Shown one piece after another: positions 2,438 through 44,548 of a stretch of DNA of 64,000 bases. Source of the stretch: Isurus oxyrinchus (taxonomy: Eukaryota). The stretch's first letter is position 1. Each line of letters starts with the position of its first letter. Made by a program: the position numbers and the translations under genes. The DNA lies in NCBI GenBank assembly GCA_026770705.1, contig JANJGN010000036.1, positions 1,426,001-1,490,000 on the forward strand, given 5' to 3'. The notes beneath the pieces are model-generated. The model saw only the letters and a program-made list of their open reading frames with translations, had not been told where the DNA came from and did not search any database.

Positions 2438-2515
2438 TCTGGGGGAGGATCTCTCTTTGCCTCCCTGGAGTTTGCTGCATTGGAAAGTAGATCAAAAAAG
2501 GTGGGTGGCAGATGA
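2438..2515 (+). CDS. Terminal exon of an upstream class-2 gene (SGGGSLFASLEFAALESRSKKVGGR*); the rest lies upstream or outside the window
   Basis: Acceptor atatttcccag. Exon and 3' flank align with 13708-13850. AATAAA at 2733-2738. Confidence 0.7.
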   Translation, partial: SGGGSLFASLEFAALESRSKKVGGR

Positions 2516-3449
2516 GAATCCGGGATGAATTCTCTCTATTAAATTGTGGAGGAGACAGAAATTGCCAAAGAATCTGCCGCACTTGCGCTCCAATTTCCAA
2601 ATTTCAGCATCAAGTTTAAGGCCAAACATCCAACTTTCCGCTCTCAACTCATTTTAACCGGACAAATCCTGATGCATTTTCCAAGCAGGAGATATAGAAG
2701 TGGGCAATGTTACACTGAACTCAAAACCGATAAATAAAACCTGGCAAACGCGTGTGCAAAACTTCAAATGATTTTGAAGACTTAGTCAGGCGGGAGACAT
2801 GAGGGTTTGTAAGGGGGTGAAAGAGTTGAAGAAAAGTATATGTTTTCCATAACATATACTTAATTAATGAAAATTTATAAATGCATTGCAGCAACTCGCG
2901 AAGGCCCCTTCAGCAGCACATTCCAAATCCGCAACCTCTACCACCTCAATGGAAAGGGGCAGAAGAAGGCACCACAATCTGCAAGTTGCAAAATAGCCAG
3001 ACATGGATTTATTTCCTCCTTCAAGGCTGGGTCAGAATCCTGGGACTCCTTATCTAATGGATTTGTGGAGCATCTTCGCCATTGAGACTGCAGTGCTTCA
3101 AGGACAGGGCTAAACACCACCTTCTCACGGGAAATTAGGTATGGGAATCAAATTCTTGTCTTGCCAGCGATGTTCAAATCCTATGAATAAATTATGAAAA
3201 CAGTAACACATTTTAACATAGGCTGTATCAGGAATGAATGAATCATTCGACTGGTATACACTCTCACAATTGTCTTCCTTACTTATCTTCAATAAAGAGC
3301 AGGAAATTGAAAGGAAATTTCCCAGAATTCACCATCAATCAAACTCAACATCACTCCTCCAAATTGATTTTCGGAACATCAAAGTATTAAAGGTTATCAC
3401 ACATTTAAAATGATATATCATGTGCCACAGCTTTCTGTCCGGCTATGAA

Positions 3450-3870
3450 ATTATTCAGTTGGCAACTCCCTTATCTCTGAATAAGGAGTTTGTGGGTTCA
3501 TGACCCACTTCAGATACTAATGGTCCCAGTACCAATACTGAGAAAGGGCTTCACTTTCGGAGGAGGAGTTTCTCAGGCGTGATTTTAAATCGTGTGTCTG
3601 TCAGCCATCTCTGATGGATGAAAAACGCCCAACAGCCACCATTTGAGGCTGGGGTGAAGTACTCACCTGTGTTCTGGGACAAATATTTACCTCTTAGTCA
3701 ATTCTGTCCATTATCACGCTGATGGTTGTGGGAGAAGCTTTGCGCAAATTGGCTTCTGCGTTTCCCACATTGCAAAAGAGATGACATTTCAAAAGAGAAC
3801 TTCGTTGACTGTCAATCGCTAGCGGATGCCCTGAGGTTGTGGAAGCTGCTATAGAAATGCACGTCTACCT
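3450..3870 (+). mobile_element. DeuSINE-like SINE (related copy at ~12770-13180)
   Basis: tRNA-like head (..gtgggttca..cccact..), central ctgtcagcc.tctc..g domain, and tail gctatagaaatgca. Family assignment is by recognition only. Confidence 0.55.
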
Positions 3871-3936
3871 TTATTATTAAAACTAGAGTTCTGATGCTAA
3901 ATAAGGGACCGAGCGGCCGGGCCATTTGAATGTGAT

Positions 3937-4402: not shown

Positions 4403-4519
4403 CTGCTTTCTCTCCGTACTGAAATGTGTCTGGGCCACTGCATAAATGGATCATAAATACACGTGTTTGCGCTGCAAACCAATATGGAGAAACAGGCTCC
4501 CTGATACTTGAAGGAAATA

Positions 4520-5649: not shown

Positions 5650-6600
5650 TAATACCCTCTGTTACCGGGAGAAATATTCCTTGCAAACTCAAACAATGTG
5701 CAGACAAAATATCAAACAACATTACTGGCTGTAAATCCAAGCAGGCGAGGTAAACGTATTAAAACATATAAGATTCTGACAGGGTTTCGCAGGGTGGATG
5801 CTGAGAGGATGTTTGAACTCGTTGGGGAATGTCGAGATAGGGTCACAGTTTCACAATAAGCGATCCCCCATTTATGATGGAGATACGGGGGAATTCCTTC
5901 TCTAGGTTTGTCGTTAGTTTATTGGAGTTCGCTTCCATAGAGAACACTGGAGGCTGGGCCATTACATATATTCAAGGCTAAACTGGGCGGATTTCGATTT
6001 AACAAGGGAGCCTATGGTTATGAACAGGAAGTGCACTTGAGGCCACAATCAGATTAGCCAAGAACTTTTTGAATGGCAGTGCAGGATCGAGAGCCTACTC
6101 GTGCTCCAATTTGTTCTGATCGTTTCATCTTCGGTCACTTGAAACACATGTTGTGATGGTAATTGTTCATTTGTCTCAGAATCAATCTGAATAGAACGTG
6201 CAAAATATTAAAGCATCCATACCATGCGAATGGGTGTTTGGATTGAACTGATTTGGACTCAGTGTTAAATGCCGCGAAATTGTTAGTGATTATTTTTTTA
6301 AAAATAGTTCAGTTAGTCTCTTTTCTTTGTGGGAGATATTCACTCTGTTTTCGGGGTCAAGCCAATTAATATTTTAAAACGACGCACACTAAACAAGTGC
6401 TTATCAAAACATTTCTGTTCAACCTCAATACTCACCAGCTCAACCGCTTTACTGAATCCAAATCCGAATAAGGGTGAAGAGTAGAACCCGGATACTGGTG
6501 ACAGTTATGGCAAAGGAACAAAATGCACCATCCCAACCGAGACAAATTATTTAGAAACTGCTGCTTGATAAACCATTCTTTTATGGGACTCCCTCTTGTG
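5650..6600 (-). pseudogene. Inverted class-2 remnant: TM exon 6436-6532 and cytoplasmic exon remnants (~6320-6345, ~5650-5690)
   Basis: Reverse complement gcagcagtttct..GATGGTGCATT..GTTCTACTCTT..AAAGCGG..|GTGAGT aligns with TM exons 11273-11365 and 44029-44130. 'tcccacaaagaaaa' matches 'tcccacaatgaaaa'. Intron sequence also aligns. Confidence 0.7.
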
Positions 6601-8224
6601 ACACTTCAGCCAGTTATAAAGTCAAAGCAGCAAATGCGAGCTGCAAATTCTCTGCAAGACTCCATAGTAACCCATGTCGATGAATCTTCAGGAGAATGCT
6701 GAGGGACGGAAGCTGGGAGTGAAGCGCGAGATGCATTCATTTTCATGTGATGAACTTGATGCAATGAATTATTCGCAGAATGAGTTCTCAAGTCAGCAGA
6801 CAGTGTTGTTACTCAGTGAGTGTCTGAACTGTTCTTCAGAAATGGTTGACCTTGAATAAGAAGGAAGTGAGTCAGTGAACATTCCAGCAGAGAGCGGGGC
6901 TGGGCAGCAAAGAGACTCATTGGCAGTGACCGCGGCTGTTTACTGCAGGGCTCAGAAAGACGCCTCGCTCACAGCCCATTCAGGGGCTTTGCAAAACATA
7001 TCGGTTGGCGTGATTCGCTGGCCAAGATTATGACCGATCTTCGCTTGAGATGGAATATTATACTCATTCCAGAAGCTGTCGTTGCTTTTCGTGTTTTTAC
7101 AGTCGAGGCGCTTCATGTACAGAACCGCCTGCATTTGACGCAATCTTAAACCGCAGACAGAAGAGCTTTTGCCATCCTGGGTATATTCAGTTGAATAGAG
7201 AACAGGCTGGTTTACATTCACCTTATTTACAGTGTCCTTATCGACCTGACACTGGGTCACTCTTTACGTGCGATCACCGATATTTGATAAAAAAGAAACT
7301 GGTCCCCAATATTATGCACAAATGATGCATTCCCCTCTTCAGAGCTTTAGGAGATTGTAGTTTGTTCCATCTATACACAGGCAGCACTGCAACCAATCGC
7401 CAATACTGCCACTGCCTAGAAAGACAGGGGAAGAGGGGGAAAATGAGCACCACCAACTCCAATTACCGCCTCCCCACCCGCCCCCCCCCCCCCCCACCGC
7501 CCCCCCCCCCCCCCCCCCCATCCCCAAGACAAACACTATCCTGGTTTGGAGTTTTATCCCCGTTCCTTCACTGTATCGGGGTCAGAGTCCTGGAACTCAT
7601 TCCCTGAGTACTCTTGGCGTATCTGTACCAGAGGGACTGCTGCTCTTCAAGCAAGCGACTTACCACCTCCTCAAGGGGCAATTGGGGATGGGCAATAAAC
7701 GCCCATGAACGGATGCAAATAAATTAACGGACTATTGCTTTCAGCAAAAGTCAAAGGGAAGTATGTGTATATATCGGAGCATCATAAACCTTTCACCCAC
7801 TGTCCCTCAGTTTCACTGCTCTAGAAAATTTTCTCATTGCAAATTCGCGGAGACTCTCGCTGCTCGGCTAGCGCTGATTCCCGGCTGACAATTATTTTCC
7901 ATCATATCCTAACGCGGCTGTTTAGAAAGAGGAGCAACATTCCGCTAGGAATGAGGAAGATCGGAAATCTTTTTCCCGAGGTTACTAGCAGATTTTCAGG
8001 CTGGGAATATACCCAGTATGTATTGGGGGTTTGTAATTGCGGCCTCATTTTGGCGCTTTCTTCAAAATCATGTCCACTCTTATTGCCGCTGGTTCTGTGA
8101 GTCGGTTCTACCCGAGTTATTTGCTGTGAAGCCGCTCTTTCAGCAGCAGAAAGCGGGAGTGTCCTGCCGGTTCAGGATCTAAATCTAAACGCGGAAAATA
8201 GAGGCCTCAGGTTCTCAAATAGTA

Positions 8225-8428: not shown

Positions 8429-9178
8429 GCCCTCAGGTACTGGTCTGTCTCCTACGCGGTTCAAACGGTTGGTAATTCGCTTTGTGAATATTTTTATTCG
8501 AAGCTCCATTTTGTGCAGTTGCCTGAGACCTTAATTCGAAAAATTGCAAATCAGCAGCTGGACTAGGAACATAAGTCAGAACAATAACGGTATGATCTTT
8601 TCTAGAACCTTGTACCGGCCACACTTGGACTAACTGTGCACATTTCTGGACTGCATTTTATAAATCGAATATTGAACTGGAGACGGTGCAAAGAAAATTG
8701 ACAAGGCTGATACCAGAGCTGAGGGGTTAAACTAACAGGAACGATTGAATGGGTTAGGTCTTTTTTCACCAAACACAAGGCAGAGGAGCGACCTGACAGA
8801 CCTAAAACTGGCTCACCGCCACCTTCCCAAAGTCAAATCGGGATGACTAAATTTCAATGAAACATTACGTGTAATATTTACGATTATTATTCTGCCACTC
8901 CATCTGAGGGCCAACCCAGTAAATGTCTTCATAAACATGCTGCCACTTGACCACTGTGACGCACAGACGATGACCACAGTGAGTCAAACGCACGTGACCT
9001 TTACCAGGTCACCGGAGCCAAAATGGTGTCATACTTTCCATAACATAGCTCGTCATAGTTTGCACCGCATCTGAAAGGGAAGCAACTCACAGGGACTGAG
9101 CTCAGGTCAGTCTGCGGCGTCTCGACCTGTAGTAACAAACTGGTGAGAGCGAAAACAAGGAGAACTCATGGCGTCAAG

Positions 9179-12100
9179 ATGTCCAAGGAATCGTTATCTC
9201 TGATATTCATTTTCCAAATGCTGCCGCTGTTTGTTGAGCAATGGGCGGCTTAGAATTTTAAAACGAAATCAGCCAGAATCTGTGTTTCGCAAAGTAAAAA
9301 TGTGACCTAGTGAGCAGTGGCATGGATTTGACCTGATCATATGAGTTTATCCACTCTTTTCTCCGAGAAAGCGAAGGAATGAAATTGGTGAGTTAATCTG
9401 ACCACGAATAATTAAAGGCATTGATGTGACTGTTGTGAAATAACAGGCGAAGTCTTTCAAAGCGGCTGCTTTCAATCTCTCAATATCGAGCCGTACTGTA
9501 ACAATACTCTCGCTACTTACAGAATCCGACGCTCTGTGTCTCAGAGCCCTTTCATAATGACAGCTGAATTCGGAGAGACGGTGGGATTAATCTGTCACGA
9601 CATTAAAGAAGTGGAGTTGGTGTCTAGATATTTCTGGTACAAACAACATGTGGGGGAAGCCCCGATACTAATCGACAGCCAGTCTTGTCAGCGAGTCGAT
9701 TGTAAGTTTATTTCCAAAAAAGGCAAAGGCGAAAATCTGTTAACTTTGGAAATTCGCAATGTCCATGTGAATGACTCCGGCTCCTACTACTTTTAGGGGT
9801 AGCAATGCATCGCTCCAGAACCGAATAACACTACTGGTTGGAGGTAAGAGAGCAAGTGAAATCAATTCAGATCATGCACAGCATTATCATTTGGAGCAAG
9901 TTTATCGTCACTGTGTACCAAACTCTGCCCAGACAGTTCCACCAACAAGAGGCTGTGCGGGTGTTTGTCACGCCAGTGATCTGCATTTGAGGGAAACCGT
10001 CCGCTTAGTGTCTTTGGACAGTAGTGTTTCTTCCAAGCAGATTGCAATTTCTTTAGTATTTCCAGCCTGGTCACCGAGGGACCGAGAGATCCCGGTACAA
10101 TGGAGGCGGACGGGACCTACAGCATCAGGAGTCACGTCATGGTGTCGAGGGAAACCTGGAAAACTGGCAGTGTCTGCACCTGTATTGTTCAACTAGGGTC
10201 TCCAAACAAATATTTGACAAAAAGCGTGTCGTTCCCCAATGCAGCAGAGGCAGGGAGAGGTGAGTTGGTGATCTGTCCGATGAACGTTTTAATTCAACTT
10301 TAGAGTCAATTTGAGAAATTAAGTAGCTTTTTAGAATTTGCAGGCTGTAAAATAATCTATATATATATATATATATAAAATACCAAGTTATAATAAGCTT
10401 GGGTTACCTTAACCTCAGATGTTGGCTTGTTCTTCTGAACAATTTATGGGCTTGTCTTATATTTTTCCATCACATAGTAGAATCCTAGAACGATAGATGT
10501 AGAAAGAGGGAATGCGGCCCATCGTAACTGTGCTATCTCTTTTTAAGAGTTTTCCAACTGGTTCCACCCTTTCACTACAACACTACCATATTTTCCTCTA
10601 CAAATTAGAATGTGATTTTCCTTCTCAAATTTATTGTTGAATCTACTTCAGCCGCCCATTTCAGGCAATATATCTTGGAATGAAATTGATGTCAGTTCCA
10701 CACTGGATGCACTTTACAAGCAGGAAACAGCCAAGAGTGCATTGGGGAGGGTGTACATGAGATTTACCAGAATGGGATCAGGGATGAGGGACTTCAGTTA
10801 ATGTGCAGAGACTGTAGAAACTGACATTGTTGTCTTCAGATAAGAGGAGATGAAGGGGGTAGATTTAAACCAGCCGGTCAAAATCATGAGAGGTTACAAT
10901 AGACTAAATAAGAAGAAACTGGTACTGCTAGCAGATGGATCGCTAACCAGAAGGACACAGAATGAAGATTTTAAAATAAGCGATTTGTTGTGATCTGGAA
11001 GGCGCTGCCTGAAAAGGTGATAGAAGCAGATTTAAAAGGAACTTTCAAAAGGGAAATTAGATAAATGATGATGGAGAGATATGTTCATGGATATTGGACG
11101 AAGAGCAGGGAGAATAAGACTAATTACATGCCTCTTTCAAAGGGCCTACACTGGAACGACCGCAAGAATGGAATGCTTCTCGGCCTCCTTTTGGATCACG
11201 TTTCCCATCAGAGAATCCCAGAAGAAGAATCATTTCACCGAGCAGCAGTTTCGAAGTATTTTGTCCCTGTAGGATGGTGCAATTCGGCCCTTATTGTTAG
11301 CATAATTGTCCTGGTGATGCTCTTGGTCGTTATTTCCATCAGGATTAGTAAAAGTGGCAGATCAGATGAGGGTTAATATTCATCAGGGATGTTTTTTTTT
11401 TCTCTATCTGATTCGCTTCTCGCAGTTTTAAATTGCTAATTTACTTTCTGCTTCCAGGATAACGCGACAAGAGATCCCACAATGAAAATTGAGTAACTGA
11501 ACCATTTGAAATGTTCACATCGAACAGCATCTCTATATTTATGACTGGGTCTAACCCAGTTCAACCCCAACAATGATTCCAATGGTATATGCTAACGTTT
11601 TTCATGAGCTTTTAAGATTAATACGAACAATTTTCTTCTCAGCTAATTTTGGTGCCCACGCCAGGATTCACAATACATAACACGTGTTTGAAATTTTTGT
11701 TCGCATTCAGGTTTAACCTGGGAGAGAGAAGACAAAGACAGCGACAGAATGAGGAACAAACGGGTAAGTCCCAGTGACATGTTGGCACTGGTTAAATCTC
11801 AGTGGGTGGAATAGGAAAAAAGCGTAAGAGCATTTACCGCCATCAAATTGTTCCACAATCACAGGGCTTTCTCTGGGTCCCATGGCAAATGTCATTTTCT
11901 GATTACTAAGGGTGGAAATAATACATCAGTTGGGCAATAGTCGCCAGGCACTTTTGGTAGACAATGCTTGTCTATCCATTGGCGAATTTAACTTCACTGA
12001 AGTGTTGAGGAAACTTCCGTGTATTGGGCGGACCTCCTGTGGATTGGGGGCCTGTTGACATTTTGGGGTCCTTTTGTGCATTGGCAGAACATTAGCGAAT

Positions 12101-17519: not shown

Positions 17520-18050
17520 ATGAATGTATAGATAGATAGTTAGATAGATAGATAGATACATAGATACATAGATGCATAGATGGATATATCGATAGATGTA
17601 TCGTTAGTTAGATGGATGGATAGCTAGATAGATAGGTAGATGGATGCATAGATAGAGAGATGCCTAAATAGATAAATGTCTAGAAAGATAGATGGATCTC
17701 TGGATAGATACATAGATGTTTAGATAGATAGATAGGTAGACAGGTAGATAGATAGTTAGATTGATAGATAGATGTCTAGATAGATGCATAGATAGATGAC
17801 TAGGTAGATAGATAGAGAGATAGATAGATGGGTATGTTGATGGATAATTGGATAGATGGATGGATAGATGAATCACAAGATTGATAGATAGATGGATGGA
17901 TAGATGGGTCACAAGATTGATAGATAGATGGATAGATGGATGGTCACAAGATTGATAGATAGATGGATAGGTAGTTGCATGGATAGATGGATGGATAAGT
18001 GGATGGATAGATGGATGGATAGATAGATGGATGTCTGGATAGAGAGATAG
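17520..18050. repeat. (GATA)n/(GGAT)n compound microsatellite; paralogous tract at ~27800-28275
   Basis: Directly visible tetranucleotide arrays. Confidence 0.95.
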
Positions 18051-29937: not shown

Positions 29938-30194
29938 GGTACATGATCAGAGAATAGAGACTCCATGTGCCGTTAACTTCCCCCGAAAATACACTTGTTA
30001 GATGGTTATATTCTGTCACTGTGTAAACCAGTTGCAGGTGCGCCCGGTTTAGACAAGGGGTCCGCCCCCGCCCCCGCCCCTCCTCCTCCCCAGCACCGTC
30101 ATCTAAGCCGTGCCATAGTGCACCATGTAGCTACTTCCAAGCGAGAGAATCTGAACCGCCGGAGACCGGGACAAAACTGCCTGAGATGCAATAA
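29938..30194 (-). pseudogene. Truncated class-1 V-exon remnant inside a duplicated block (~27800-30820, paralogous to ~17450-21380)
   Basis: AVLSRSPAVQILSLG..LQLVYTVTEY..LYSLI. Flanks align with 18130-19370 and 21040-21380. The 3' part of V, the C1 exon and the leader are deleted. Confidence 0.75.
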
Positions 30195-34238: not shown

Positions 34239-34283
34239 TTAGAGTGTGCGATCCTCCTTAAGCGCCAAGCGGGCATAAAATGT
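34239..34283 (-). CDS. Class-1 gene exon 6: TFYARLALKEDRTL* (TxYxxL, ITIM/ITSM-like)
   Basis: Acceptor atttttctccacag, phase 0 matching exon 5, stop TAA at 34241-34239. Confidence 0.7.
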   Translation of the reverse strand, partial: TFYARLALKEDRTL

Positions 34284-37200
34284 CTGTGGAGAAAAATAAT
34301 TACAGAATCTATTAATATAGCAAACAACAACATCGTAGGGAAATGCATATATTTCACCGCATTTCTACATTTCTTTAGTTCTGATGAAGAGTCATAAGGA
34401 CTGCAAACGTTAACTATATTACTCACCGCAGATGCTGTCAGACCTGCTGAGGTTTTTCAGCTATTTTTGTTTATGTTCCAGATTTCCAGCATCTATAATA
34501 TTTTGCTTTATACATCATCATAGGGATAGAAGGACGCCAGCCAGCCCCTCCAATTTATTCAATTAGATCATGGCTGGACTGTATCGTAACTCCCATCTAC
34601 CCACCTTGGTTCCACAACGCTAAATCCCCTAATCCAACAGAAATCTGTCAATCCTAATTGTGTCATTCCCAGTTGAAGCCGCAGGCTCAGCAGCTTTTGA
34701 GGGGAGAGAGTTCCAGGTTTCCACTTGCCTTTGTGTGACTAGTGTTACCTGACATCACCCTTGAACAACCTGGCTCTAATTTTAAACCTGTGTGGGCTGC
34801 ACTCCATCCCAGCCCAGTTTAGCCCAGCCCAGCACACCCCAATCCACCCCAAGTAGCTATCCGCCCCCACACCCAACCCCCAGCCACCCCCCACCCGCCC
34901 CCCCACGCCAACAGCAGAGCAAATAGTTTATCTCCACAGACACGGTCGTATCCTTTTATCATCTTACACCCCTCAATTAGATTAACCCTCAATCTTCCCC
35001 ACGAGAAGGATTGAAGCCTAGTTTCTGCCATCCTACTGTACCCATGATGCAATGTTTTCCTGACACTTACAACAATAATGATGACTTTTAAACCATAGAT
35101 TCAAATACAGTGAAATGCATCTACTTGAGTTGCAACACTTTCATTCTTTTACCTCTTCATTGTGTCGGTGTGCTCTTGAATCTGTCAGTTCCTGATCATT
35201 GTTCATGTTTCCTGGTAGAAAGTGAAATTTGAACTGAGCATGAGTAGTTACATTTCACACTGAACCGGCTGAAAATGTCAATAACTGATTGATAAATGAA
35301 TGTATTGAGAGCGCCGCGGAGTTACAGCGTCTCCCAACAATCATTACCTGTTTGTTGATTCCTACATCTCTTTCTCCCGGCCACAAGTATCAGCCCCAGA
35401 AGGAGAAGCGCCGCTGAAGACAAACTCCCGAAAAGTGGAAAAATGCAGGTGGCGGGTAGTGGAGAATCTGCAAAAAAAAAAAAAATCATTGAAAAGAAAT
35501 CTTGTTAAATTAATTAAACAATTGAATGAAATGACAACCCTGAATTTGTGATTTCACCTGAAAACGGACGTATATTTTTCCATATTTCATTATCCTGAAA
35601 TAAAGCAGTGATCTTATAGAGCAATGCTGATACAGGACAGAAGTGGGAAGAGAAAGGAAGAGGGAGAAGAGATAGACGGAGAAATTGGTAGCAAGAGACA
35701 ACAAAGATCTTACAGAACCCTGTAAAATAGAATAGTGAGAGAGAGAGAAAGAGACGTAGATAGAGCACTGTTTATATGAGACAGAAATAGAGAGAGAGAA
35801 AAATCAAGAGAGAGAGAGAGACGGAGCAACAATATTATGGAGCATTGATTCAAAAGTAGAAGCATAGAGAGGTAAGGAGGGATAAAGAGAGATAAAGGGA
35901 GATTGACAGAGAGAGATACTTAGAGCACTATTTTAATAGCACAGACATTTTAAGCCGGAGAGGGATGAGCAGAGTGTGATCGAGAGAGCAGATCACTTAT
36001 ACAAAACTTTCAACTAGGTTAAAAAAAGAGAGAGATATGTTGAGAGGGGGAGAGAGGTGAGATGGAAAAGGAGGGGAAAGGGCCTGAAGAGAGGGAAATT
36101 AGTGTAGAGAGGGAGAGTGGGAAGATGGGGAGAAAGGGGGAAATTAGTGTGAGAGAGTGCGAAAGGGAGGTATGGGGACAGAGGGAGAGAAGCTGGAGAA
36201 AAGGAAAATTGGGGAGAGAGAAGGAGAGGGGGAGAGGGGGAGAGAGTGACAGAGAAGGAGAGATGGTAGATAGGGGAGAAAGTGAGAGTTGGATAGATTA
36301 AGAGTTGGAGAGAGATGGGGGCGGAGAGAAGCGTGGAGAAGATAGGGAGAGATCGGACATAGGCAGAGAGGCACTGAGGGAGATTGTGAAAGGGGAGGAT
36401 TGGGTGAGATGGGGAGAGAGGGGGAGAGAAAGAGGGAGATAAGGAGAGGGCGAGGCAGTGGAGAGATGGTTGAGAAATGGAGAAATGGGTGGAGAGATGG
36501 ATGGCGAGATAAATAGACGCATACACAGGGATGAAGAGAGCAAATAACGGTTTAACTGCATTGAAAATGACAGCGAGAGAAAAACAGATAAAGGCAAATT
36601 GAGAGAGAGATTGAGAGTAATGGAGACAGAGAGAAAGAGTGACAGAGAAAAGTATGGAGACAAATCGAGAGATAGAAAGATAGATAAATGTCACAGATTT
36701 CTTTTAACGCACCATTTAACAAGGATAAAAATAAACAATATAAACAGCGAGAGAGTGAGATAGATAGAGGGATAAATCTATGTATCACTAGATAAAGACA
36801 GAGCGTGAGACAGGGAGAAATTGACAGACAAACAATTGGAGGGACTGGGAGAGACAGGGAAAGAGAACGATAGTTGTAGAGAGCGTTTCAGGGACAGAGA
36901 GAGTCAGACAAACAATGGAAACAGATATCTTACACTGCAGCAGGACACAAATGGATTGACTGATAGAGAGCGAGAGAGATGGGCAGGCAGATAAACAGAC
37001 AGTGACACAGAAGGGGAAGATACCTTAAAGTTCATTGTTTAACTAAGGCAGAGTGAAATATTGTGACGTTAAGTGGATGGATGAATAGATAATAGTGCAC
37101 ACACATGGTGAGACAGAATGGTGCACATCTTTCAATTTTACACATTGACAAGTCAGCCACTGGCAGGCAACTATGTCAATATGCCAAGCCAAATAAAACA

Positions 37201-38924
37201 ACACCAGAACTAGAAGTAGGAGATAATTCGGCCCCTCAAAGTAACCCGCCATTCAATAAGACCATGGCTAATGGTGTAGATCAACTTTACATTCCCGCAC
37301 TGTCCACGTCCCTTATTCCCTTAATGTACAAAAATCTATCTCAGTGACTGAGGACCCATAGTTCTGGCTTAGACAGAAGAGATAGAGTTGAAATGTCATA
37401 AAGCAAAACTCTGAAAGATTGAGAGATCTGTGACAGGTCATTGATAAAATTTTGATCCATGAACACACATGCAAAGATGGACAATTCTAAGTTACAAAAT
37501 TGCAAAGCCTGCCAACAGCATTAAATAGATATTTAAACTGTCACTGTTAAAAGATACCTCTCTGAGATGAGACATTTGCACTGAGAAGATTTTCACTGGA
37601 GTTGATTTGAATGGCGCAAGTACAGAGAGCGCCGCTGCTCCAAGTTTCCGCCGAGAGGCTGGTATAACTCTTGATAGTGTATGTCCCGTCCGATTCAATT
37701 GTCCCGGAATCGGTCTGTCCCTCGGTATCCCCCGAGAAAACATTCCAGCGGACGGGAAAGGAATCGGGAGACAAGCCTCTGATGAAACACAACAACGGGA
37801 CCCTTTCCAGCGAAGGGATCTCATCCTCCGGCGGGGTGAGGAGGAATATGGTCGGGGAGCCCTCTAAATTTGGTAAATGAAACAGAAGTGCCATTAACAA
37901 CTGAGACCAGAGACAGATGGTTGCTGTAGAAATGCCCAACGCGATGGAATAATGATGAAATTTACCTGTAACCACTAACTGGGAGCCATTTCCGAATATA
38001 AAAGTCTGGTTCCCGGAATTGCGGATTGCACAGTAATACATTCCAGAGTCATTTCTCCGGGTATCCGCAATGATCAGTGAATATTTACCCGCTTTTTCAG
38101 AAATCCCGCTGGAAAACCTCCCCTCTGCTGGGATGTCCTTATGCGCTGTGTAAACCAGCTTGCTGTCGCTTCGCTCCTGCTGTCTGTACCAGAAGATGAA
38201 CCGAAATTTATAGCTCTCCGTGTAGCAGCTCAGTTTAGCGCGACTCCCCGCAGGAAGTGTCTGAACCGGCGGAGACTGGGACAAGACGGGGTGAGACACA
38301 ATAACTGAGCAAGGGAGAAAAAATAAGCGTCACTTCAACTTACGATGCAGCCCGTCACCCCGCAACCTCAACCCCACTAGCCTGAAGCCAGCCTCCGGCG
38401 AGGACACCCTGATATGGAGGAGGAAGAATCATTTATTAAAAATCATCTATATCGGAAAATGTCACACCCGCATCGCGCACAATTAAAATCAGGCTGATTA
38501 AGTGAGTATTTGCACTGTTTTCACCCGGTTTTCCAAAGACACAGTATGAGTCCATTCACCAGTAAATGTGTTTTAATCAGTGGGGTACGCACATGGGAGC
38601 TGTATGAAGTTATAATCTTAAAAGATCTTCTTCAAATCTAAAATTCCAAAAAAATTGTTTTCTCTCATCCACTTTTCGCTTCTTCTTATTTTGCGTTGAC
38701 TTTGTGCATTTTATTTTGTTCAAGAGATTATAACTTTCACTAATAATGTACCTGAAACGCTCTCCTTTCCTTAACCATTTTTCCCCTGATTACAGGCCTT
38801 CCTGCCAGTAGAAAGATTTTCTCCTTATTCGCTCTACACCAACCCTCCTCCACTCTATCTGAACATGTTAAGATATCTTACCCTGGAAGAGATGGGACAA
38901 TGCACACACAGAGAGGAAGTTCAT
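34239..38924 (-). CDS. Intact 6-exon non-rearranging antigen-receptor-like gene (class 1): leader-VJ-C1-TM-cyt-YxxL, 303 aa. Exons 38924-38882, 38304-37966, 37863-37558, 35467-35348, 35211-35153, 34283-34239. PRARP/VJC1-like
   Basis: All five introns are GT..AG with compatible phases (1,1,1,1,0). Exon lengths sum to 912 nt = 303 aa + TAA with no internal stop. V: LSC..WYRQ..DSGMYYCAIRNSGNQTFIFGNGSQLVVT. C1: CFIRGLSPDSFPVRW..DGTY..W..CTC. TM: CIFPLFGSLSSAALLLLGLILVAG-RKR. Tail ends EE-TFYARLALKEDRTL*. Confidence 0.88.
34330..34512 (+). mobile_element. PLE terminal-repeat fragment with degenerate hammerhead core, in the last intron of the intact gene
   Basis: TAGTT-CTGATGA(34381)-AGAGTC..GACT-gcAAA-CGTT-AACTA, followed by the family tail gatgctgtcagacctgctgag..tttccagcatc. 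Confidence 0.65.
35153..35211 (-). CDS. Class-1 gene exon 5: cytoplasmic GNMNNDQELTDSRAHRHNEE
   Basis: Acceptor ctttctaccag, donor GAG|GTAAAA. A homologous exon is present in the pseudogene at 16940-16984. Confidence 0.75.
35348..35467 (-). CDS. Class-1 gene exon 4: stalk Cys + transmembrane helix (DSPLPATCIFPLFGSLSSAALLLLGLILVAGRKRCRNQQT)
   Basis: Poly-T acceptor ..ttttgcag, 120 nt, phase 1-1, donor ACAG|GTAATG. Hydrophobic run followed by basic stop-transfer RKR. Confidence 0.85.
35730..37020. repeat. Purine-rich (GA/GGA) low-complexity tract in intron 3 of the intact gene
   Basis: Strong A/G strand asymmetry, which explains the spurious Leu/Ser/Pro ORFs here. Confidence 0.9.
37558..37863 (-). 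CDS. Class-1 gene exon 3: C1-set constant domain
   Basis: Acceptor ccaaatttag|AG, donor AGAG|GTATC. Sequence SPTIFLLTPP..LLCFIRGLSPDSFPVRW..SDGTYTIKS..ETWSSGALCTC matches the C1-set pattern. Confidence 0.9.
37966..38304 (-). CDS. Class-1 gene exon 2: V-set domain with germline-joined J (FGNG motif)
   Basis: Acceptor ttttctcccttgctcag, donor ACAG|GTAAA. Canonical Cys, WYRQ, DSGMYYC and FGNGSQLVVT all lie in one exon (within ORF 37547..38299). Confidence 0.93.
38882..38924 (-). CDS. Class-1 gene exon 1: signal peptide MNFLSVCALSHLFQ
   Basis: ATG at 38924, 43 nt, phase-1 donor CAGG|GTAAG. Splices in frame to V exon VIVSHPVLSQSP. Confidence 0.8.
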
Positions 38925-39097
38925 TGTCCGTGACTTCTGATGGTCAGAATCTGAACCCCGATCCGAAACTCTCTGAGAACTCGCCCTCTGTCTCTCGGTG
39001 TGAAGGGGGTGTGTAATGTGCAGACTGAATAGTGTTCTGTGTTTATTAATAGATACACGAAGGGGGTTGGTAAATGGTGCCGAGGTAGACACCTCTC

Positions 39098-39114
39098 TGT
39101 GGTTTTCCTGTTTA
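39098..39114. promoter_or_regulatory. Composite RUNX/ETS/Forkhead-like motif (TGTGGTT-TTCC-TGTTTA) ~180 bp upstream of the class-1 ATG
   Basis: The core GGTTT(T)CCTGTTTA is conserved upstream of both class-1 pseudogenes (~21078-21093 and ~30516-30531). Confidence 0.5.
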
Positions 39115-41404
39115 GCGCAGGTCAAAGTGCTGTCACGTACTCACCACCTGTTTTCCAAAGTACACCAGTTATGTACTCACATCAGTTAGATAACACTTGT
39201 TCTGCATGTTCTAGAAATATGATCTATATTCAGATACAGTTAATGTTTCACAGTGATGATATCTGATCTGAGAGCTTATATATATTAGGAACGAATGAAC
39301 CGACTGGGGCTCCTGTCTCCAAACGGTGTTGGGGGGGCTGGTGTGGAGAGATTGAGGGGTGACCTGACCGAGGTATTTAAAATTACGAAATGGTTTATTT
39401 AGGCCGACGTAGGTAAGATAGCTCTAATTCTGCAGATTTCAAAAATATTGGTCATCAATCAATCCGACCGGAGAATTCAAGAATTCTCATTGAGGTTTCG
39501 AGGAATGAAAGGTGATCTTATTGAAATATGTACGTTCCTGAGGGGCATAGATAAAAGGGCTACCAGGAGGATGTTTCCTGTTGTCTCCAAAACTTGGGAT
39601 ATAGTTAAAAATAGAGGTCTCCATTTAAAGCAGAAATTACGAGATTTATTTTCACCAAGTGGGTTGTTGGTCTGTGCAATAGTCTTCCCCAGAAAGTAGT
39701 CGCGATTGGGTCTTTGAATTTATTCAAGGCCCCGTGTTAGACAGATTTTTGTTAGGTCAGGGATTGAAGACCTATGGGCGGCAAACAGGAAAGTGTAGTT
39801 GAGACCACAACCAGGTCAGCCATTATTTTATTGAATGGTGAAGCAGGCTCGAAGGGCCCAGTGGCCTCATTCTGCTCCTCTGTTGCTTTCGTCCTCTGTA
39901 ACAAGAGGTCGTTAATATGAGATAAACCGAGTCTGGAATTCAGGGGAAACCGCTCTACGCAGACCGTGGGTAGAACGTGGAACCCGTTTGCACAGGGGTT
40001 GGTCCAGGCTATTTTAGTGTTACAGTTAAGTGGCAAGCTGGATAAACAAACGCGGGGGAAATGAATAAAGGAAATGTTGTTGGGCTGAGATGAAGAGGAG
40101 GTGTGAGGAGGCTCATGCGGAGCACGAGAAATTGGGTCATATTGCCAGTTTCTGTGATGTAAATTCTATCTAACTCTGTAAACTGCAAAATCAAGAGAGC
40201 TTAACAACAACTTCAAAGTAATAACTGTGCAGATAATTTTCCATTGAACTGCTGTAAATGCACTTGGAGGGCAATGCAAAGTGAAACTTGTAATATTATT
40301 TGAAACTCGCTTCAACGGGACCTATCTATCAAATCATTGGTAATTAGAATACAAAATGAACTCAGAGCACTGAAATCATGATAATCCCCAATGGCGCTTT
40401 ATATAATAGAACAAAGCAGTCCGCAAACCTATTCAATGTGACTTAACTGACAGGAAGACAGTCCACGGACATTTTAAGGAACAGAACTGAATTGAAAGAG
40501 ATTCGTTCATTTAGATTCTCAATAAGTACAGTGAATGACCGTGTTTGATGCATTAGAATTCCAATCTATATCTCTGCATAATTTGTGCATGTTGAATAAG
40601 ATAATAGCAATTAAAATTAAAATCAATCCACATACATTTCATCCAATATTCATCCAGTCTCTGTGTTGACCAGAATGTCTCACGATTCTTGTAAACCTGT
40701 TTATAGAATAGATACTATTGATTATTATCACACGACACTCCGAATTCCTGGCGTTTACTTTCCAAACCTGCGACCTCTGCAAACTTGAAGTGCAAGTGCA
40801 GCAGTTACATGGGAACACCACCCACTGCAAATTACTCTCCATGTCAATCATCACCCTGACTTGGAAATATATCACAGGTCCTTCAGTATCACTGATTCAA
40901 AATCCTGGAACTTCCTCACTGAAAGCACGGTTGGTGTACCTACACCACAGGGACTCCAATGGTTCAGGAAGGCAGTTCACCACCATCTTCTCAAGTGACA
41001 ATCGGTGATCGCTAATGCATCCTGGCCTTTCCAGCGACTCTGACATCTCGAGAATGAATCAATCTTTGACAACAATAGTTAGCATCCATCCATCCAAATT
41101 AGTAATCTTTGAGCCCCGCGCCCCCACACTCTGAGCGACATCCCAGTAAAGTTCTTTATAGACCTGTTGCCACTTGCCCGCTGTGACGCACAGACGGTGA
41201 TCACAGTATGAAAAATGCAATTGATATTCACCAGGACACCCACTCAAAATGGCGTCATACTTTCCACAGCAAAGCTCGTCATGGTTTCCACCGCATCTGA
41301 AAGGGGAGCTATTGACTGGAGCTGAGCTCAAGTCAGTCTGAGGCCACTCCACCTGCGGTAACAAACTGGTGAGAGCGAAAACAGGCAGAACACGCCGCGA
41401 CAAG

Positions 41405-44400
41405 ATGTCCAAGGATTATTTATCTCTGATGCTTATTTTCCAAATATTGCGGGTTTATGGTGAGTAAGAGGCGGGTGAGAATTTGAAACTAGACTTAGCC
41501 AGAATCCGTGTTTACTAAGCTGAAAATGTAACCCAGGGACAAGGTGAAGGGGTTTGACCTGATCATGTGAGTTTATTTACTGGTTCCTCTTATAAAGCGA
41601 AGAAAATCAAATTGGAGTATTAATCTGACCAAGAATATTTAAAGACAATGATGTGACTGTTTTAAAATAAGAGTGAAATGTTTCAAAGCGGCTGCTTCTT
41701 ATCTCTCAATCGTGATAATGCAACAACACCCCCTCGAGTTGCAGAATCCGAGACCTCTCTGTCTCAGAACCCCATCATAATGACAGTTGAATTCGGAGAG
41801 ATTGTGGAATTAACTTTTCAGTGCATTTACGAAGTGGAATCGGTGTATTTCTATTTCTGATACAAACAGCGTATGGGTGGAGCCCCGAAAACAATCAAAA
41901 GCCAGTCCTGTCAGGGGGCTGATTGTAAGTTTATTTCCAAAAAATGCAGCATCACAAACGTGTTGATTCTGGAAATTCGCAATGTCCAGATGAATGACTC
42001 GATTTCCTGCTGCTGTGCTCGTAGGGGTAGCTATGTACCTCTACAGAATGCAACAACACTATTAATTTTAGATAAGAGAGCATAAGAATTCAGATATTAC
42101 ACAGCATTAACATTTGGAGCAAATTAATCTCTCTCCAGACAGTTCCTCCAAGAAAAGGCTTTGCGGGTGCTTGCCCCGCCGGGTGAGCTGCAGCTGAGGG
42201 AAACCGTCCCCTTGGTGTGTTTGGTCAGTGGAGTTTCTTACCAGCTGGTTGCTATTTTCTGGAAAATTTCAGGCCTGGTCACCGAGGGACCGAGAGATCC
42301 CGGCGCAAAGGATGCGGACGGGACTTACAGCATCAGAAGTCAAAGTGTCGAGGGAAACCTGGAAAACTTGCGGTTTCTGTACTTGTATTTTTCGACTGGC
42401 GTCTCTAGGGAAATATTAGACAAAGTACGACACGCTCTTCACCAAAGCAGCAGGGACAGGGAGAGGTGAGCTGGTGATCTGTTCAAACAATCAGTACAGG
42501 AATTCACTAGACTCAAAGAATCTGCAGTCTCCAGTCTCCGAATTAAACACCTCAACCAAATAAAAGATAACTATGGATAGAAAAAATATATATTTGTGAG
42601 TGTGTCAGAGTATGTGTGTGTGTACGTGTGTGTTTATATGTTTGCGCGTGCGTTTTTCTGTGTATATAGAATTTATAGGTTATATATATGTATGTCTGTA
42701 TGCATTTATGTCTGTCTACCTCAAAGTAAAAAGCGCGTTCAAAGTTTTTAAAATAAATTAGTGATGTCCTTTGTCCGAGAGGGAGGCTTTGTCTTGTAAA
42801 ATATTTCTCGGCTCGCCTTAAGTTCCTGTGTGACATTTTTGAATCATAGAGTAACACAGCACATAAAGAGGATATTCAATTAATCCCACCTTTTCCCAAT
42901 CATCCTGTAACACGTTCCCGTTCATCATAATCCATTTAATAATCCGATTTCCCTCATGGAAGCTATTCCTTAATCTGCTTTCCCCATCCTTTCAGGCAGT
43001 GGATGAGGAATAGGTTTGAGATTAGTTCAAAATAGGATGAGATAATGAACAAAAGGCTGTGAAGAGATAAGATTGTTTTGAACGACAAACTATCTGAAGG
43101 GGCGTGACTCTCGCTCATTTCCCCGGTCTCCTTCTTCATTTCCTGGAATCTCCCTTATCAATCTCTATTTTCCTGTTAAAATCCAGTTTATTATTAACAT
43201 CAGTTGGTGATATCAGCAGTCGCAATTTTACATTCACCTCGTGTGATGACACGTCAGTGAAATTAGGTTGATAAGGAACTGATCGAGTTTCACACGCATC
43301 AGGCAGATCGCGCACATATATTAATCTCAGAATGTGGCAGAACAACTTGATATGGCCGCGAAAAAATCATAGCGAAACCTGGGCTTCATTAATAGCGCAA
43401 AAAAAACAAGAGAATTTCCTACATTATGAAGATCTGGTCAGACCCCAGCTGGAGTACTGTGCCCAATTCTGGGGGAAATATGTTGGGTTTTCTTTACCCA
43501 AAGAGCTGAAACAGACACGTTTAGTCGAATTAAAAACAAAAAAAACTGCGGATGCTGGAAATTCAAAACAAAAACAGAATAACCTGGAAAAACTCAGCAG
43601 GTCTGGGAGCATCGGCGGAGAAGAAAAGAGTTGACGTTTCGAGTCCTCATGATCCTTCGACAGAACTCAGTTCTTCTCCGCCGATGCTGCCAGACCTGCT
43701 GTGCTTTTCCAGGTAATTCTGTTTACGTTTAGTCGAATTGCCTACTTCTGTGTTGTTTTATTCTATTATTCCACAATTCACTTTCCAGGTAGACATCGGT
43801 ATGATGCTTTAATTATAATTTTGGACCAATCCTGACAGTGTTGTCCGTCAATTGATCTCCATTCGAAAACATTGCTCCATTTATTTTATTCTGTGTGTCC
43901 ACAAGCCGCGGCCTGTCGCACTGGCTATTTGAGACACAGACTATTAACTGGGTCACGTTTCCCATGAGAGAATTCCAGGAAATAATGATTTGACCGAGCA
44001 GCAGTTTCTAATTGTTTTGTCTCTGCAAGATGCTGCATTCCGACCCTTAATGTTAGCAGAATGGCGGCGGCGATCGCAGTTCTACTCTTGATTCTCATTT
44101 TAATTGGGACACATAAAAGCGGCAGATCAGGTCATGATCAATGTTTATCAGGGACATTTTCATAACTGGTTGTCCAATCTGAATCCCTTCTCGCAATTTT
44201 AAATTACTAATTACTGACTCTCATTTCTGGAGAACAAGACATGAGATCCCACAATGAAAAGTGAGTAACTGAATCATTTAGAAAGTTTAACCCGAACAAC
44301 TTGTCTATATTTAAGACTCGGCGTAACCCAGTTCAACCTCAACACTGATTCCAACGATTCCAACTGACATGTCCCATGATCTTTCAAGGTTGATTCTAAG

Positions 44401-44548
44401 ACCGCTCGACAATTTTCCTCTCAAATATTTCCGACAGCTGAACCAGGATTTACAGGACATAACAATTGTTTGATATTTTTGTTCGAATCCAGTTTGAGCT
44501 TGAGAGGAAGAGAGACGGCAAATCGATATGCAGAATGAATGACAAAAG
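41405..44548 (+). pseudogene. Class-2 V-C1-TM receptor pseudogene, head-to-head with the intact class-1 gene. Leader 41405-41459, V 41745-42071, C1 42139-42465, TM ~44029-44130, cyt ~44230-44260 and ~44493-44548
   Basis: Leader MSKDYLSLMLIFQILRVY|GTGAGT. V ESETSLSQNP..QC..F*YKQ (Trp to TGA at 41858-41860) with donor GT>AT at 42072. C1 LVCLVSGVSYQLVAIFW..DGTYSIRS..CTC with frameshifts. TM acceptor damaged. Confidence 0.85.
43532..43724 (-). mobile_element. Young 193-bp non-autonomous PLE-derived fold-back element with hammerhead-like core and 15-bp TSD
   Basis: Perfect direct repeat acgtttagtcgaatt at 43517-43531 and 43725-43739. Inverted arms. Reverse-complement core GAGTT-CTGTCGA-AGGATC..GACTC-GAAA-CGTC-AACTC. 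Confidence 0.8.

What the first reader, a model, noticed from the sequence alone, without database searches (positions are those of the whole stretch)
2438..44548. Two-class receptor cluster in divergent/convergent arrangement: candidate germline heterodimeric proto-antigen-receptor system
Seen: at least 7-8 copies or remnants. Class 2 (+) at 2.4 kb, class-1-like (-) at ~4 kb, class 2 (-) at ~6 kb, class 2 (+) at 9-14 kb, class 1 (-) at 17-21 kb, class 1 (-) at 30 kb, intact class 1 (-) at 34-39 kb, class 2 (+) at 41-44.5 kb. The intact class-1 ATG (38924) and the class-2 ATG (41405) are head-to-head about 2.5 kb apart. Both classes have a Cys immediately before the TM (ATC-IF; GWC-NS; CC-IP), a ~70-100-bp V-C intron and a shared R(S)HNE cytoplasmic motif. 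Inference: the two chains are co-regulated and may form a disulphide-linked heterodimer, like TCR chain pairs, diversified by gene birth-and-death rather than by RAG.
Basis: partly seen in the sequence, partly recalled or inferred. Interest (0 to 1): 0.85.

Follow-up and report, generated by a model that had tools for sequence, protein, structure and literature searches.

The report
Shark non-rearranging V-C1 receptor gene cluster
This stretch of shark DNA holds one working gene and six dead copies or fragments of antibody/T-cell-receptor-shaped surface receptors that need no gene rearrangement. The family is old and has two types, but pairing of the two types into a TCR-like two-chain receptor is not shown.

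Summary
The copies are real, but there are seven, not eight, and only one is intact. The class-1 gene at 34239-38924 (-) has six exons with consensus splice sites and predicts 303 aa: leader, V with a fused J (FGNGSQL), one C1-set domain, a Cys before an uncharged membrane span, and a TFYARL tail. An RNA-type contig shows the predicted C1-to-TM splice. Both class-2 genes (8.9-13.8 kb and 41.1-44.5 kb, +) are old pseudogenes that share a frameshift. The rest are a class-1 pseudogene, a class-1 fragment and two class-2 fragments. The copy claimed at about 4 kb is not supported.

Both classes occur across sharks and rays and share contigs in five shark species. Class 2 also occurs in chimaera and probably lungfish. 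The same architecture occurs in turtles, lizards and salmonids. This is most likely the cartilaginous-fish branch of a known kind of non-rearranging VJ receptor, probably PRARP, though I could not test membership. The scan has already reported this family in at least eight other windows of the same genome piece.

One class-1/class-2 pair is head to head, with ATGs 2,480 bp apart, but its class-2 member is long dead. Complex prediction gave only weak support. Heterodimer odds are about 0.25.

The parts
2429..2515 (+). Class-2 terminal-exon remnant (..GGGSLFASLEFAALESRSKKVGGR*). The motif Tyr is replaced by Phe. No upstream exons lie in the window.
   Evidence: tblastn to class-2 proteins gives 65-73% identity, E 3e-7. 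DNA is 75% identical to 13667-13844.
6181..6616 (-). Class-2 TM/cytoplasmic fragment with stops and a frameshift (AAVSK*FVSVG..AFCSFAITVTSIRVLLFTLIRIWIQ*). No V or C exons are present.
   Evidence: blastn to 11192-11622 gives 64% over 447 bp, E 1e-10, and to 43945-44023 gives 76%. Translation.
8903..13788 (+). Class-2 pseudogene A. Exons: leader ATG 9179; V 9533-9843 (YYC changed to YYF, two stops, a frameshift); 88-bp intron; C1 9932-10234 (1-nt deletion near the start shared with copy B, a second frameshift near 10045, canonical Cys lost); TM 11263-11373 (GWC|NSALIV..); RSHNE exon 11466-11486; further exons 11709-11768 and 12173-12226; tail 13702-13788 (GGPLYASPDL).
   Evidence: Pfam gives V-set and C1-set on the pieces.
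16789..20209 (-). Class-1 pseudogene. V at 20209-19857 has stops, and YYC has become FYS; the FGNGSKL motif is kept. C1 at 19791-19442 has two stops and a frameshift. The TM/cytoplasmic region 17209-16975 is 69% identical to 35438-35201. A possible tail lies at 16902-16789. The a/b subtype is unresolved.
28685..30814 (-). Class-1 fragment, a duplicate of the 18.2-21.4 kb segment. The V remnant lies at 30210-29900. There is no C1 exon.
   Evidence: Self-blastn gives 66-72%. tblastn.
38882..38924 (-). Intact class-1 gene, exon 1: leader MNFLSVCALSHLFQ, 43 nt, GT donor, phase 1.
37966..38304 (-). Intact class-1 gene, exon 2: V domain with germline-fused J (YYCAIRNSGNQTFIFGNGSQLVVT), 339 nt.
   Evidence: Pfam V-set E 3.9e-16. 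PDB best hits are TCR alpha and Ig light-chain V, E down to 6e-18. Splice sites.
37558..37863 (-). Intact class-1 gene, exon 3: C1-set domain, 306 nt. It is preceded by a 102-nt intron that is in frame and stop-free.
   Evidence: Pfam C1-set E 6.5e-8. PDB hits to Ig heavy-chain constant regions, E 6e-21. The fold of the homologue matches IgNAR and IgG constant domains and TCR chains at Z about 13. An X9 contig covers 37558-37788 with no mismatch.
35348..35467 (-). Intact class-1 gene, exon 4: stalk Cys plus uncharged TM (DSPLPATC|IFPLFGSLSSAALLLLGLILVAG RKRCRNQQT), 120 nt.
   Evidence: The loose end of the X9 contig matches 35438-35467 with 2 mismatches in 30. That match is the C1-to-TM splice.
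35153..35211 (-). Intact class-1 gene, exon 5: cytoplasmic exon (GNMNNDQELTDSRAHRHNEE), 59 nt.
34239..34283 (-). Intact class-1 gene, exon 6: tail TFYARLALKEDRTL plus stop, carrying a TxYxxL motif.
38925..41404 (.). 2,480-bp divergent intergenic region between the class-1 ATG and the ATG of class-2 pseudogene B. The 275 bp upstream of the class-2 ATG are conserved with copy A.
41130..44513 (+). Class-2 pseudogene B. Exons: leader ATG 41405 (MSKDYLSLMLIFQILRVY); V 41738-42071 with the invariant Trp codon now a stop at 41858-41860; splice donor GT changed to AT at 42072; 67-bp intron; C1 42139-42419 (1-nt deletion shared with copy A, frameshift near 42335-42343, stop 42417-42419); degenerate TM near 43990-44070 (ARCC|IPTLNV..); RSHNE exon near 44238-44261. 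No tail exon was found.

Best explanation
The window is a decaying segment of a very large shark cluster of germline-encoded, non-rearranging immune-type receptors. Each gene encodes a leader, a V domain with its J already fused, one C1-set domain, a short stalk with a Cys, an uncharged membrane span, and a tail ending in a tyrosine motif. The motif is TxYxxL in class 1 and (P/I/V)xYASL in class 2.

Two ancient chain types evolve here by gene birth and death. In this window only the class-1 gene at 34239-38924 is functional. The other six units are pseudogenes or fragments.

Inferred mechanism: the V domain binds an unknown ligand. The pre-membrane Cys links two chains into a dimer, either a homodimer or a dimer with a class-2 chain encoded elsewhere in the cluster. 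The phosphorylated tail tyrosine recruits SH2-domain phosphatases or adaptors, giving an inhibitory or modulatory signal without CD3-like partners.

Shown: gene anatomy, domain types, the splice, the pseudogene lesions, and the family's distribution. Inferred: ligand binding, dimerisation and the sign of the signal.
For: - Gene anatomy: six exons totalling 912 nt, all with GT/AG sites and compatible phases. The predicted 303 aa equals the length of Heterodontus class-1 proteins.
- Domains: V-set and C1-set above the Pfam cut-offs. PDB relatives are TCR/IgL V domains and Ig heavy-chain constant regions. The fold of the homologue gives Z 12-13.6 to C1 and V domains.
- Transcription: an RNA-type contig is identical over 231 nt of the C1 exon and runs into the TM exon at the predicted junction.
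- Pseudogene lesions are mapped.
- Distribution: homologues with the same architecture, pre-TM Cys and YxxL tail occur across elasmobranchs and in turtles, lizards and salmonids. Class 2 reaches chimaera and lungfish.
- Tree: class 1 97/96*, class 2 plus lungfish 95/91*.
- No charged residue lies in the class-1 TM.
Against: - No ligand, no protein-level data and no cell type are known.
- TxYxxL is not a strict ITIM (position -2 is Thr), so the sign of the signal is a guess.
- The X9 contig differs at 2 of 30 letters in the TM exon. It may come from an allele or a near-identical paralogue rather than this very gene.
- The structural model is only moderately confident: mean pLDDT 56, about 70 in the Ig domains.
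Confidence: 0.65

Rival explanations
1. Class-1 and class-2 chains are co-regulated from shared divergent promoters and form an obligate disulphide-linked heterodimer. This would be a germline-encoded TCR-like two-chain receptor.
For: - Two conserved chain types share contigs in Heterodontus, Cetorhinus, Carcharodon, Mustelus and S. canicula.
- Both keep a Cys just before the TM.
- One head-to-head pair lies here, with ATGs 2,480 bp apart.
- Complex prediction of Heterodontus class-1 and class-2 ectodomains gave ipSAE 0.60 (runs 0.61/0.60/0.59), with the best of 3 controls at 0.00. The runs agree in at least 83% of contacts and the partner's pLDDT is at least 75. The tool's verdict was 'weak support'. 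The mark was reached by 51 of 78 solved complexes and 2 of 108 mismatched pairs. However, scores of 0.60 or under were seen in only 5 of those 78 solved complexes and in all 4 mismatches that passed, of 180.
- Earlier scan notes report head-to-head pairs in other windows; I did not check these.
Against: - Both class-2 genes here are dead and share a frameshift, so they probably died before the duplication that left them 76% identical. The neighbouring class-1 gene nevertheless stayed intact and its type is transcribed.
- Orientation in the window is mixed: one divergent pair, one convergent pair, and lone fragments.
- Class 2 lacks the FGxG bulge (it has LQNG instead).
- Both chains carry their own signalling tails, and the intact class-1 gene's TM has no charged residue.
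- The complex score may reflect memory of solved Fab/TCR structures, and it does not exclude homodimers.
Confidence: 0.25
2. The genes are not primordial. They would descend from a rearranging receptor gene whose V and J were joined in the germline by RAG activity, as is known for some shark Ig genes, and which later acquired a TM and tail.
For: - The V domain is closest by sequence to TCR alpha and Ig light-chain V domains.
- The J motif FGNGSQL is canonical.
- Germline-joined Ig genes are an established shark phenomenon (my own knowledge).
Against: - The same VJ-C1-Cys-TM-YxxL architecture occurs in turtles, lizards and salmonids. Class 2 reaches chimaera and lungfish. Any joining event would therefore have to predate the split of cartilaginous and bony vertebrates.
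- No split V/J relatives of this family turned up in the searches.
Confidence: 0.07
3. Nothing in the window is functional. On this view the 'intact' class-1 gene is a recently dead or never-expressed copy, and the RNA contig comes from a paralogue.
For: - Six of the seven units are dead.
- The contig has 2 mismatches in 30 letters in the TM exon.
- No RNA run on record holds the stretch.
Against: - All six exons are open, with consensus splice sites.
- All canonical residues are kept: both Cys pairs, Trp, YYC, FGNG and the tail Tyr.
- The match with the RNA-type contig over 231 nt is perfect.
Confidence: 0.05

Closest known systems
[quoted passage not shown] 2019, J Immunol 202:1992). It is cited in PMC10751288 and PMC11599192. 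The paper itself is not held.
   Same: - It is a non-rearranging joined-VJ IgSF gene (PMC11599192 lists PRARP among the VJ-domain genes).
- It is reported in bony vertebrates.
- From my memory only: it is a pair of neighbouring genes with an ITIM-type tail, and their products form disulphide-linked homo- or heterodimers.
- The turtle, lizard and salmonid proteins I retrieved share the shark architecture. They are likely PRARP-type.
   Different: - I had no PRARP reference sequence, so homology to a named PRARP is untested.
- The second domain here is clearly C1-set. My recollection is that the paper called it C2.
- Sharks show a multi-megabase expansion with many pseudogenes, not a single pair.
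- The reptile and salmonid clades are not resolved as orthologues of class 1 or class 2.
T-cell receptor and Ig light chains
   Same: - They share the V(J)-C1 ectodomain.
- The V domain is closest to TCR alpha and Ig kappa V.
- There is a membrane-proximal Cys as in TCR chains, and a canonical FGxG motif in class 1.
   Different: - V and J lie in one exon, so no rearrangement is needed.
- The intact class-1 gene's TM has no charged residue.
- The tail is about 40 aa long and carries its own tyrosine motif.
- This is a multigene family rather than a segmental locus.
UrIg / UrIg2 (shark non-rearranging Ig; PMC12227049)
   Same: - Both are shark genes with an unsplit VJ exon followed by C1-type domains, and both form disulphide-linked dimers.
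- UrIg2 appears among the structural matches (Z 12.1, rank 26).
   Different: - UrIg has three C domains and is secreted. UrIg2 has nine C domains.
- This family has a single C1 domain, a TM and a tyrosine-motif tail.
- It is no closer in structure to UrIg2 than to any other Ig or TCR.
SIRP family
   Same: - V domain with a J-like motif, followed by C1-set domains.
- ITIM tails in the inhibitory members.
- One teleost hit is auto-named SIRP beta-2-like.
   Different: - SIRPs have two C1 domains.
- There is no evidence here of activating partners with a charged TM.
NITR (teleost novel immune-type receptors)
   Same: - Germline VJ receptors in birth-and-death clusters, many of them with ITIMs.
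- The class-2 profile weakly hits NITR-like teleost proteins, E 1e-14 to 1e-19.
   Different: The second NITR domain is V/I-type, not C1-set. NITRs are confined to bony fish.

Membership tests
PRARP | Non-rearranging V domain with the J fused in one exon | tested here: met
   YYCAIRNSGNQTFIFGNGSQLVVT lies in the single exon 38304-37966. Class 2 has a degenerate J (LQNGPxLLVG).
PRARP | Sequence homology to a published PRARP-A or PRARP-B protein | not testable with these tools
   The Fu et al. 2019 paper is not held, and no database name says PRARP. Turtle, lizard and salmonid homologues were found, but their identity with PRARP is assumed.
PRARP | Type I membrane protein with a cytoplasmic ITIM-type tyrosine motif (a feature recalled from memory) | tested here: met
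   The intact gene has a TM and TFYARL. Homologues carry TLYARL, TEYAAL and VQYATL. The Thr at position -2 makes the motif ITSM-like rather than a strict ITIM.
PRARP | Two neighbouring gene types, A and B (recalled from memory) | tested here: inconclusive
   Two types are adjacent here and share contigs in five shark species. Correspondence with A and B is unresolved in the tree.
PRARP | Linkage to the MHC (PMC10751288) | not testable with these tools
Rearranging antigen receptors (TCR/Ig) | Separate V and J (and D) segments flanked by recombination signals | tested here: not met
   V and J are contiguous in one open exon.
Rearranging antigen receptors (TCR/Ig) | Charged TM residues and a short tail, with signalling through CD3 or CD79 | tested here: not met
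   The TM IFPLFGSLSSAALLLLGLILVAG has no charged residue, and the tail carries its own Tyr motif.
Rearranging antigen receptors (TCR/Ig) | V-set plus C1-set ectodomain | tested here: met
   Pfam, PDB, fold.
UrIg/UrIg2 | VJ followed by three or more C domains; UrIg is secreted (PMC12227049) | tested here: not met
   Only one C1 exon lies between the V and TM exons. The homologues are about 300 aa long.
SIRP | V-C1-C1 ectodomain | tested here: not met
   There is a single C1 domain.
NITR | Second domain of V/I type; the family is restricted to bony fish | tested here: not met
   The second domain is C1-set: Pfam 33.2 bits against a cut-off of 21, and Z about 13 to Ig constant domains.

The most novel reading that the evidence does not exclude
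Class-1 and class-2 chains pair through their membrane-proximal cysteines into a germline-encoded, TCR-shaped heterodimer. The two chain types would predate the split of cartilaginous and bony vertebrates. Sharks would have expanded them over megabases into a non-rearranging recognition repertoire, a living parallel to what the antigen-receptor ancestor looked like before the RAG transposon arrived.
Probability: 0.2. Interest if true: 0.8.

Novelty: new member of a known kind. Interest (0 to 1): 0.4.

Why it matters
Non-rearranging VJ-C1 membrane receptors bear on how T-cell receptors and antibodies arose. Sharks keep two ancient chain types of such receptors in a very large cluster that no paper in the held library describes; databases label the proteins only automatically, for example 'Ig heavy chain Mem5-like'.

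This window adds three things:
- An exact model of one intact, apparently transcribed class-1 gene.
- Evidence that its head-to-head class-2 neighbour has long been dead, which argues against strict pairwise dependence of neighbouring genes.
- A weak-support complex prediction for class 1 with class 2; earlier scan notes say the pairing had not been shown.

On its own, the window is an ordinary birth-and-death segment of a family the scan has already met several times.

Tried and rejected
- **The look-up of encoding contigs was closed.** I could not fetch the neighbourhoods of the Cetorhinus or Heterodontus genes, count head-to-head pairs or check MHC synteny.
- **The PRARP paper (Fu 2019) is not held.** Three full-text searches plus a combined-term search found only two immunology papers that cite it.
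- **RNA search.** No run on record as RNA holds the stretch. Runs X1, X2 and X5 gave DNA-like contigs at 95-99% identity across intergenic DNA, which says nothing about expression. Only X9 gave a spliced contig.
- **The 'class-1-like' copy at about 4 kb.** It rests on a 7-residue match only, so I rejected it.
- **Subtype of the 20-kb pseudogene.** I tried to assign it to c1a or c1b. The result is ambiguous: summed tblastn bits are highest for two c1a proteins (176 and 169) against 119 for the best c1b protein, but the end of its V domain is closer to c1b.
- **Variability among paralogues.** Among six Heterodontus class-1 paralogues, 44% of V positions vary against 37% of C positions. There are small peaks in CDR-like loops, too weak to claim ligand-driven diversification.
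- **Structure prediction.** With a 7-sequence alignment the confidence was only moderate.
- **UrIg membership.** Considered and rejected on domain count.
- **Exon joining.** Searches used the contiguous ORF 37550-38329, which reads through the intron, single exons, or natural homologues. The 303-aa length is arithmetic on the exon coordinates.


Full report
**What the window is**

The window is vertebrate DNA with about 42% GC, many retroelement fragments and microsatellite-like ORFs. The only long Ig-like ORF, 37550-38329 (-), reads V domain, a short stop-free intron, then C domain. Its nearest database proteins are all from sharks, with Cetorhinus maximus and Carcharodon carcharias at 64-68% identity. 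The genome is therefore a shark's, closest to the lamniform sharks among the species with database proteins.

**Checking the observation**

I mapped the copies in three ways: tblastn with the window's own V and C translations, tblastn with natural homologues, and a self-blastn. They give seven units:
- A class-2 last-exon remnant at 2429-2515 (+).
- A class-2 TM/cytoplasmic fragment at 6181-6616 (-).
- Class-2 pseudogene A at 8903-13788 (+).
- A class-1 pseudogene at about 16789-20209 (-).
- A class-1 fragment at 28685-30814 (-).
- The intact class-1 gene at 34239-38924 (-).
- Class-2 pseudogene B at 41130-44513 (+).

The eighth unit claimed, 'class-1-like (-) at ~4 kb', rests on a 7-residue match (E 0.37) with no DNA homology. 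I do not accept it.

- ATGs at 38924 and 41405 lie head to head.
- A Cys directly precedes each TM (ATC|IF, GWC|NS, CC|IP).
- The V-C introns are 102, 88 and 67 bp long.
- Both classes share an R(S)HNE cytoplasmic exon.

**The intact class-1 gene**

On the minus strand the exons are:

| Exon | Coordinates | Length |
|---|---|---|
| Leader | 38924-38882 | 43 nt |
| V | 38304-37966 | 339 nt |
| C1 | 37863-37558 | 306 nt |
| Stalk and TM | 35467-35348 | 120 nt |
| Cytoplasmic | 35211-35153 | 59 nt |
| Tail, including stop | 34283-34239 | 45 nt |

Every boundary has AG/GT, and the phases (1, 1, 1, 1, 0) are compatible. The sum is 912 nt, or 303 codons plus the stop. That equals the length of the Heterodontus class-1 proteins.

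The domain evidence is as follows:
- The V exon scores as V-set (E 3.9e-16) and the next exon as C1-set (33.2 bits against a cut-off of 21).
- Among solved structures, the V is closest to TCR alpha and Ig light-chain V domains (E down to 6e-18).
- The C is closest to Ig heavy-chain constant regions (E 6e-21).
- I modelled the Cetorhinus homologue. Mean pLDDT was 56, about 70 in the Ig domains. The model matches C1-type constant domains (IgNAR C3, IgG CH2/CH3) and TCR chains at Z about 13, and TCR V at Z about 12. UrIg2 is only one match among many, at Z 12.1.
- V and J are fused in one exon (..YYCAIRNSGNQTFIFGNGSQLVVT).
- The TM has no charged residue, and the tail ends TFYARLALKEDRTL, a TxYxxL motif.

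**Expression**

No run on record as RNA holds the stretch. Three runs of 'organism A' gave contigs at 95-99% identity that also cover intergenic DNA. They are DNA-like and say nothing about expression.

One small run, X9, labelled 'RNA?', gave a 595-nt contig. It is identical to 37558-37788 and stops matching exactly at the predicted C1 donor. Its next 30 letters match the start of the TM exon (35438-35467) with 2 mismatches. That is a spliced C1-to-TM transcript of this gene, an allele, or a near-identical paralogue. X9 gave no contig on the exons of class-2 pseudogene B.

**The class-2 genes are dead, and have been for a long time**

Copy A has these lesions:
- YYC has become YYF, followed by two stops and a frameshift in V.
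- There are two frameshifts in C1, and the canonical Cys is lost.
- Its 3' exons are still open.

Copy B has these lesions:
- The invariant Trp codon is a stop (41858-41860).
- The V donor GT has mutated to AT at 42072.
- There is a frameshift near 42335-42343 and a stop at 42417-42419.
- No tail exon was found.

Both copies share the same 1-nt deletion just after the C1 acceptor. They read ..AAG AG|GCT.. where intact relatives encode NKTA. The two copies are only 76% identical in DNA. The simplest reading is that the gene was already dead when it was duplicated. So the head-to-head neighbour of the intact class-1 gene has been non-functional for a long time.

**The family elsewhere**

*Class 2.* A HMMER scan of 1.84 billion representatives with the class-2 V piece, followed by a class-2 profile search, found intact class-2 proteins in every elasmobranch order sampled. 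These include Stegostoma, Heterodontus, Scyliorhinus, Cetorhinus, Carcharodon, Heptranchias, Mobula, Hypanus and Rhinoraja. The searches also found class 2 in Callorhinchus, plus one lungfish protein.

*Class 1.* The class-1 profile found elasmobranch proteins. At E 1e-45 to 1e-10 it also found turtle, lizard and salmonid proteins of about 300 aa. These have the same layout: FGNG-type J, one C1-like domain, a Cys before the TM, and a TEYAAL or VQYATL tail.

*Tree.* In a maximum-likelihood tree, class 1 is one clade (97/96*). It has two sub-lineages, and the window's gene is sister to a Cetorhinus protein, with up to 75% identity to its Cetorhinus relatives. Class 2 plus lungfish is another clade (95/91*), and class 2 with chimaera has support 93/94. 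The reptile and salmonid clades are not resolved relative to the two classes, and the lungfish branch is long.

*Linkage.* Both classes sit on the same contig in Heterodontus, Cetorhinus, Carcharodon, Mustelus and S. canicula.

**Heterodimer question**

In favour:
- Two conserved types are linked.
- A membrane-proximal Cys is kept in both classes across elasmobranchs, though not in the chimaera class-2 protein.
- One divergent pair lies in this window.
- A complex prediction with Heterodontus ectodomains scored ipSAE 0.60 (runs 0.61/0.60/0.59), against a best control of 0.00. The runs agree in at least 83% of contacts and the partner's pLDDT is at least 75. The tool calls this weak support. 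The mark was reached by 51 of 78 solved complexes and 2 of 108 mismatched pairs. However, scores of 0.60 or under were seen in only 5 of those 78 solved complexes and in all 4 mismatches that passed, of 180.

Against:
- Because Fab and TCR complexes are solved, the complex score may come from likeness to them. It also cannot separate a heterodimer from a homodimer.
- The local class-2 partner is long dead.
- Orientation in the window is mixed.
- Class 2 lacks the FGxG bulge.
- Each chain has its own tyrosine motif, and the intact class-1 gene's TM is uncharged.

I put an obligate heterodimer at about 0.25.

**Comparison with known families**

The architecture excludes several families:
- Rearranging receptors, because the VJ is unsplit, the TM is uncharged and the chain has its own signalling tail.
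- UrIg and UrIg2, which have three to nine C domains and, in the case of UrIg, are secreted (PMC12227049).
- SIRP, which has two C1 domains.
- NITR, whose second domain is V/I-type.

The best candidate is PRARP, named in PMC10751288 and PMC11599192 as a non-rearranging VJ gene linked to the MHC. The original paper is not held and I had no reference sequence. Membership is therefore likely, given the architecture and the presence of bony-vertebrate homologues, but it is untested. Earlier notes of this scan reached the same reading, and they report this family in at least eight other windows of the same genome piece, from 831 kb before my window to 1.74 Mb beyond it. So the scan had already found this family on other DNA of this genome.

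**Verdict**

The window is a mostly decayed birth-and-death segment with one functional class-1 gene. Interest is moderate, mainly for the family as a whole.

Noticed in passing
window 9932-9960 and 42139-42165: Both class-2 pseudogenes carry the same 1-nt deletion just after the C1 acceptor, although they are only 76% identical overall. The gene seems to have been duplicated after it died.
   Followed up: partly
window 37864-37965 (-): The 102-nt V-C1 intron of the intact class-1 gene is in frame and free of stops. V, intron and C1 therefore form one 260-codon ORF. Intron retention would give a 34-residue longer linker rather than a truncated protein.
   Followed up: no
window 41312-41404 and 9083-9178 (+): The stretch upstream of the class-2 ATG translates to a peptide about 50% identical to the N-terminal extension of the Heterodontus model P0017. 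This points to either a conserved 5' UTR or promoter, or an over-extended gene model.
   Followed up: no
P0100 (Cetorhinus) against window 35445-35332 and 34288-34229: The C-terminal part of this NCBI 'class-2' model matches class-1 TM and tail exons read in the wrong frame. It looks like a chimeric gene model that runs from a class-2 gene into a class-1 gene. P0019 (Heterodontus) likewise reads its C1 exon out of frame.
   Followed up: partly
window 22870-23823 (+): A 317-aa ORF has a weak GIY-YIG match (E 0.004, below the Pfam cut-off). It may be a Penelope-like retroelement remnant lying between the class-1 pseudogene and the class-1 fragment.
   Followed up: partly
window 32271-33262 (+): A reverse-transcriptase fragment (RVT_1, E 3e-11) lies just downstream of the intact class-1 gene's last exon.
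   Followed up: partly
window 50702-58717: A tandem array of units of about 1.8 kb, four to five copies at 80-89% identity. Each unit carries a 116-131-aa ORF on the minus strand. The one copy scanned (55457-55849) had no Pfam match.
   Followed up: partly
window 4521-4928; 17528-18051; 62243-62500: Three tandem repeats: an 84-bp repeat with 4.9 copies, a 524-bp (ATAG)n tract inside the class-1 pseudogene, and a 30-bp repeat with 8.4 copies.
   Followed up: no
window 37450-43400 (read laying): Contigs of 'organism A' runs match at 95-99% with many fixed differences, including in intergenic DNA. This suggests a closely related species or a divergent haplotype. The depth spikes at 39.64-40.04 kb and 40.83-41.03 kb mark high-copy repeats in the divergent intergenic region.
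   Followed up: no
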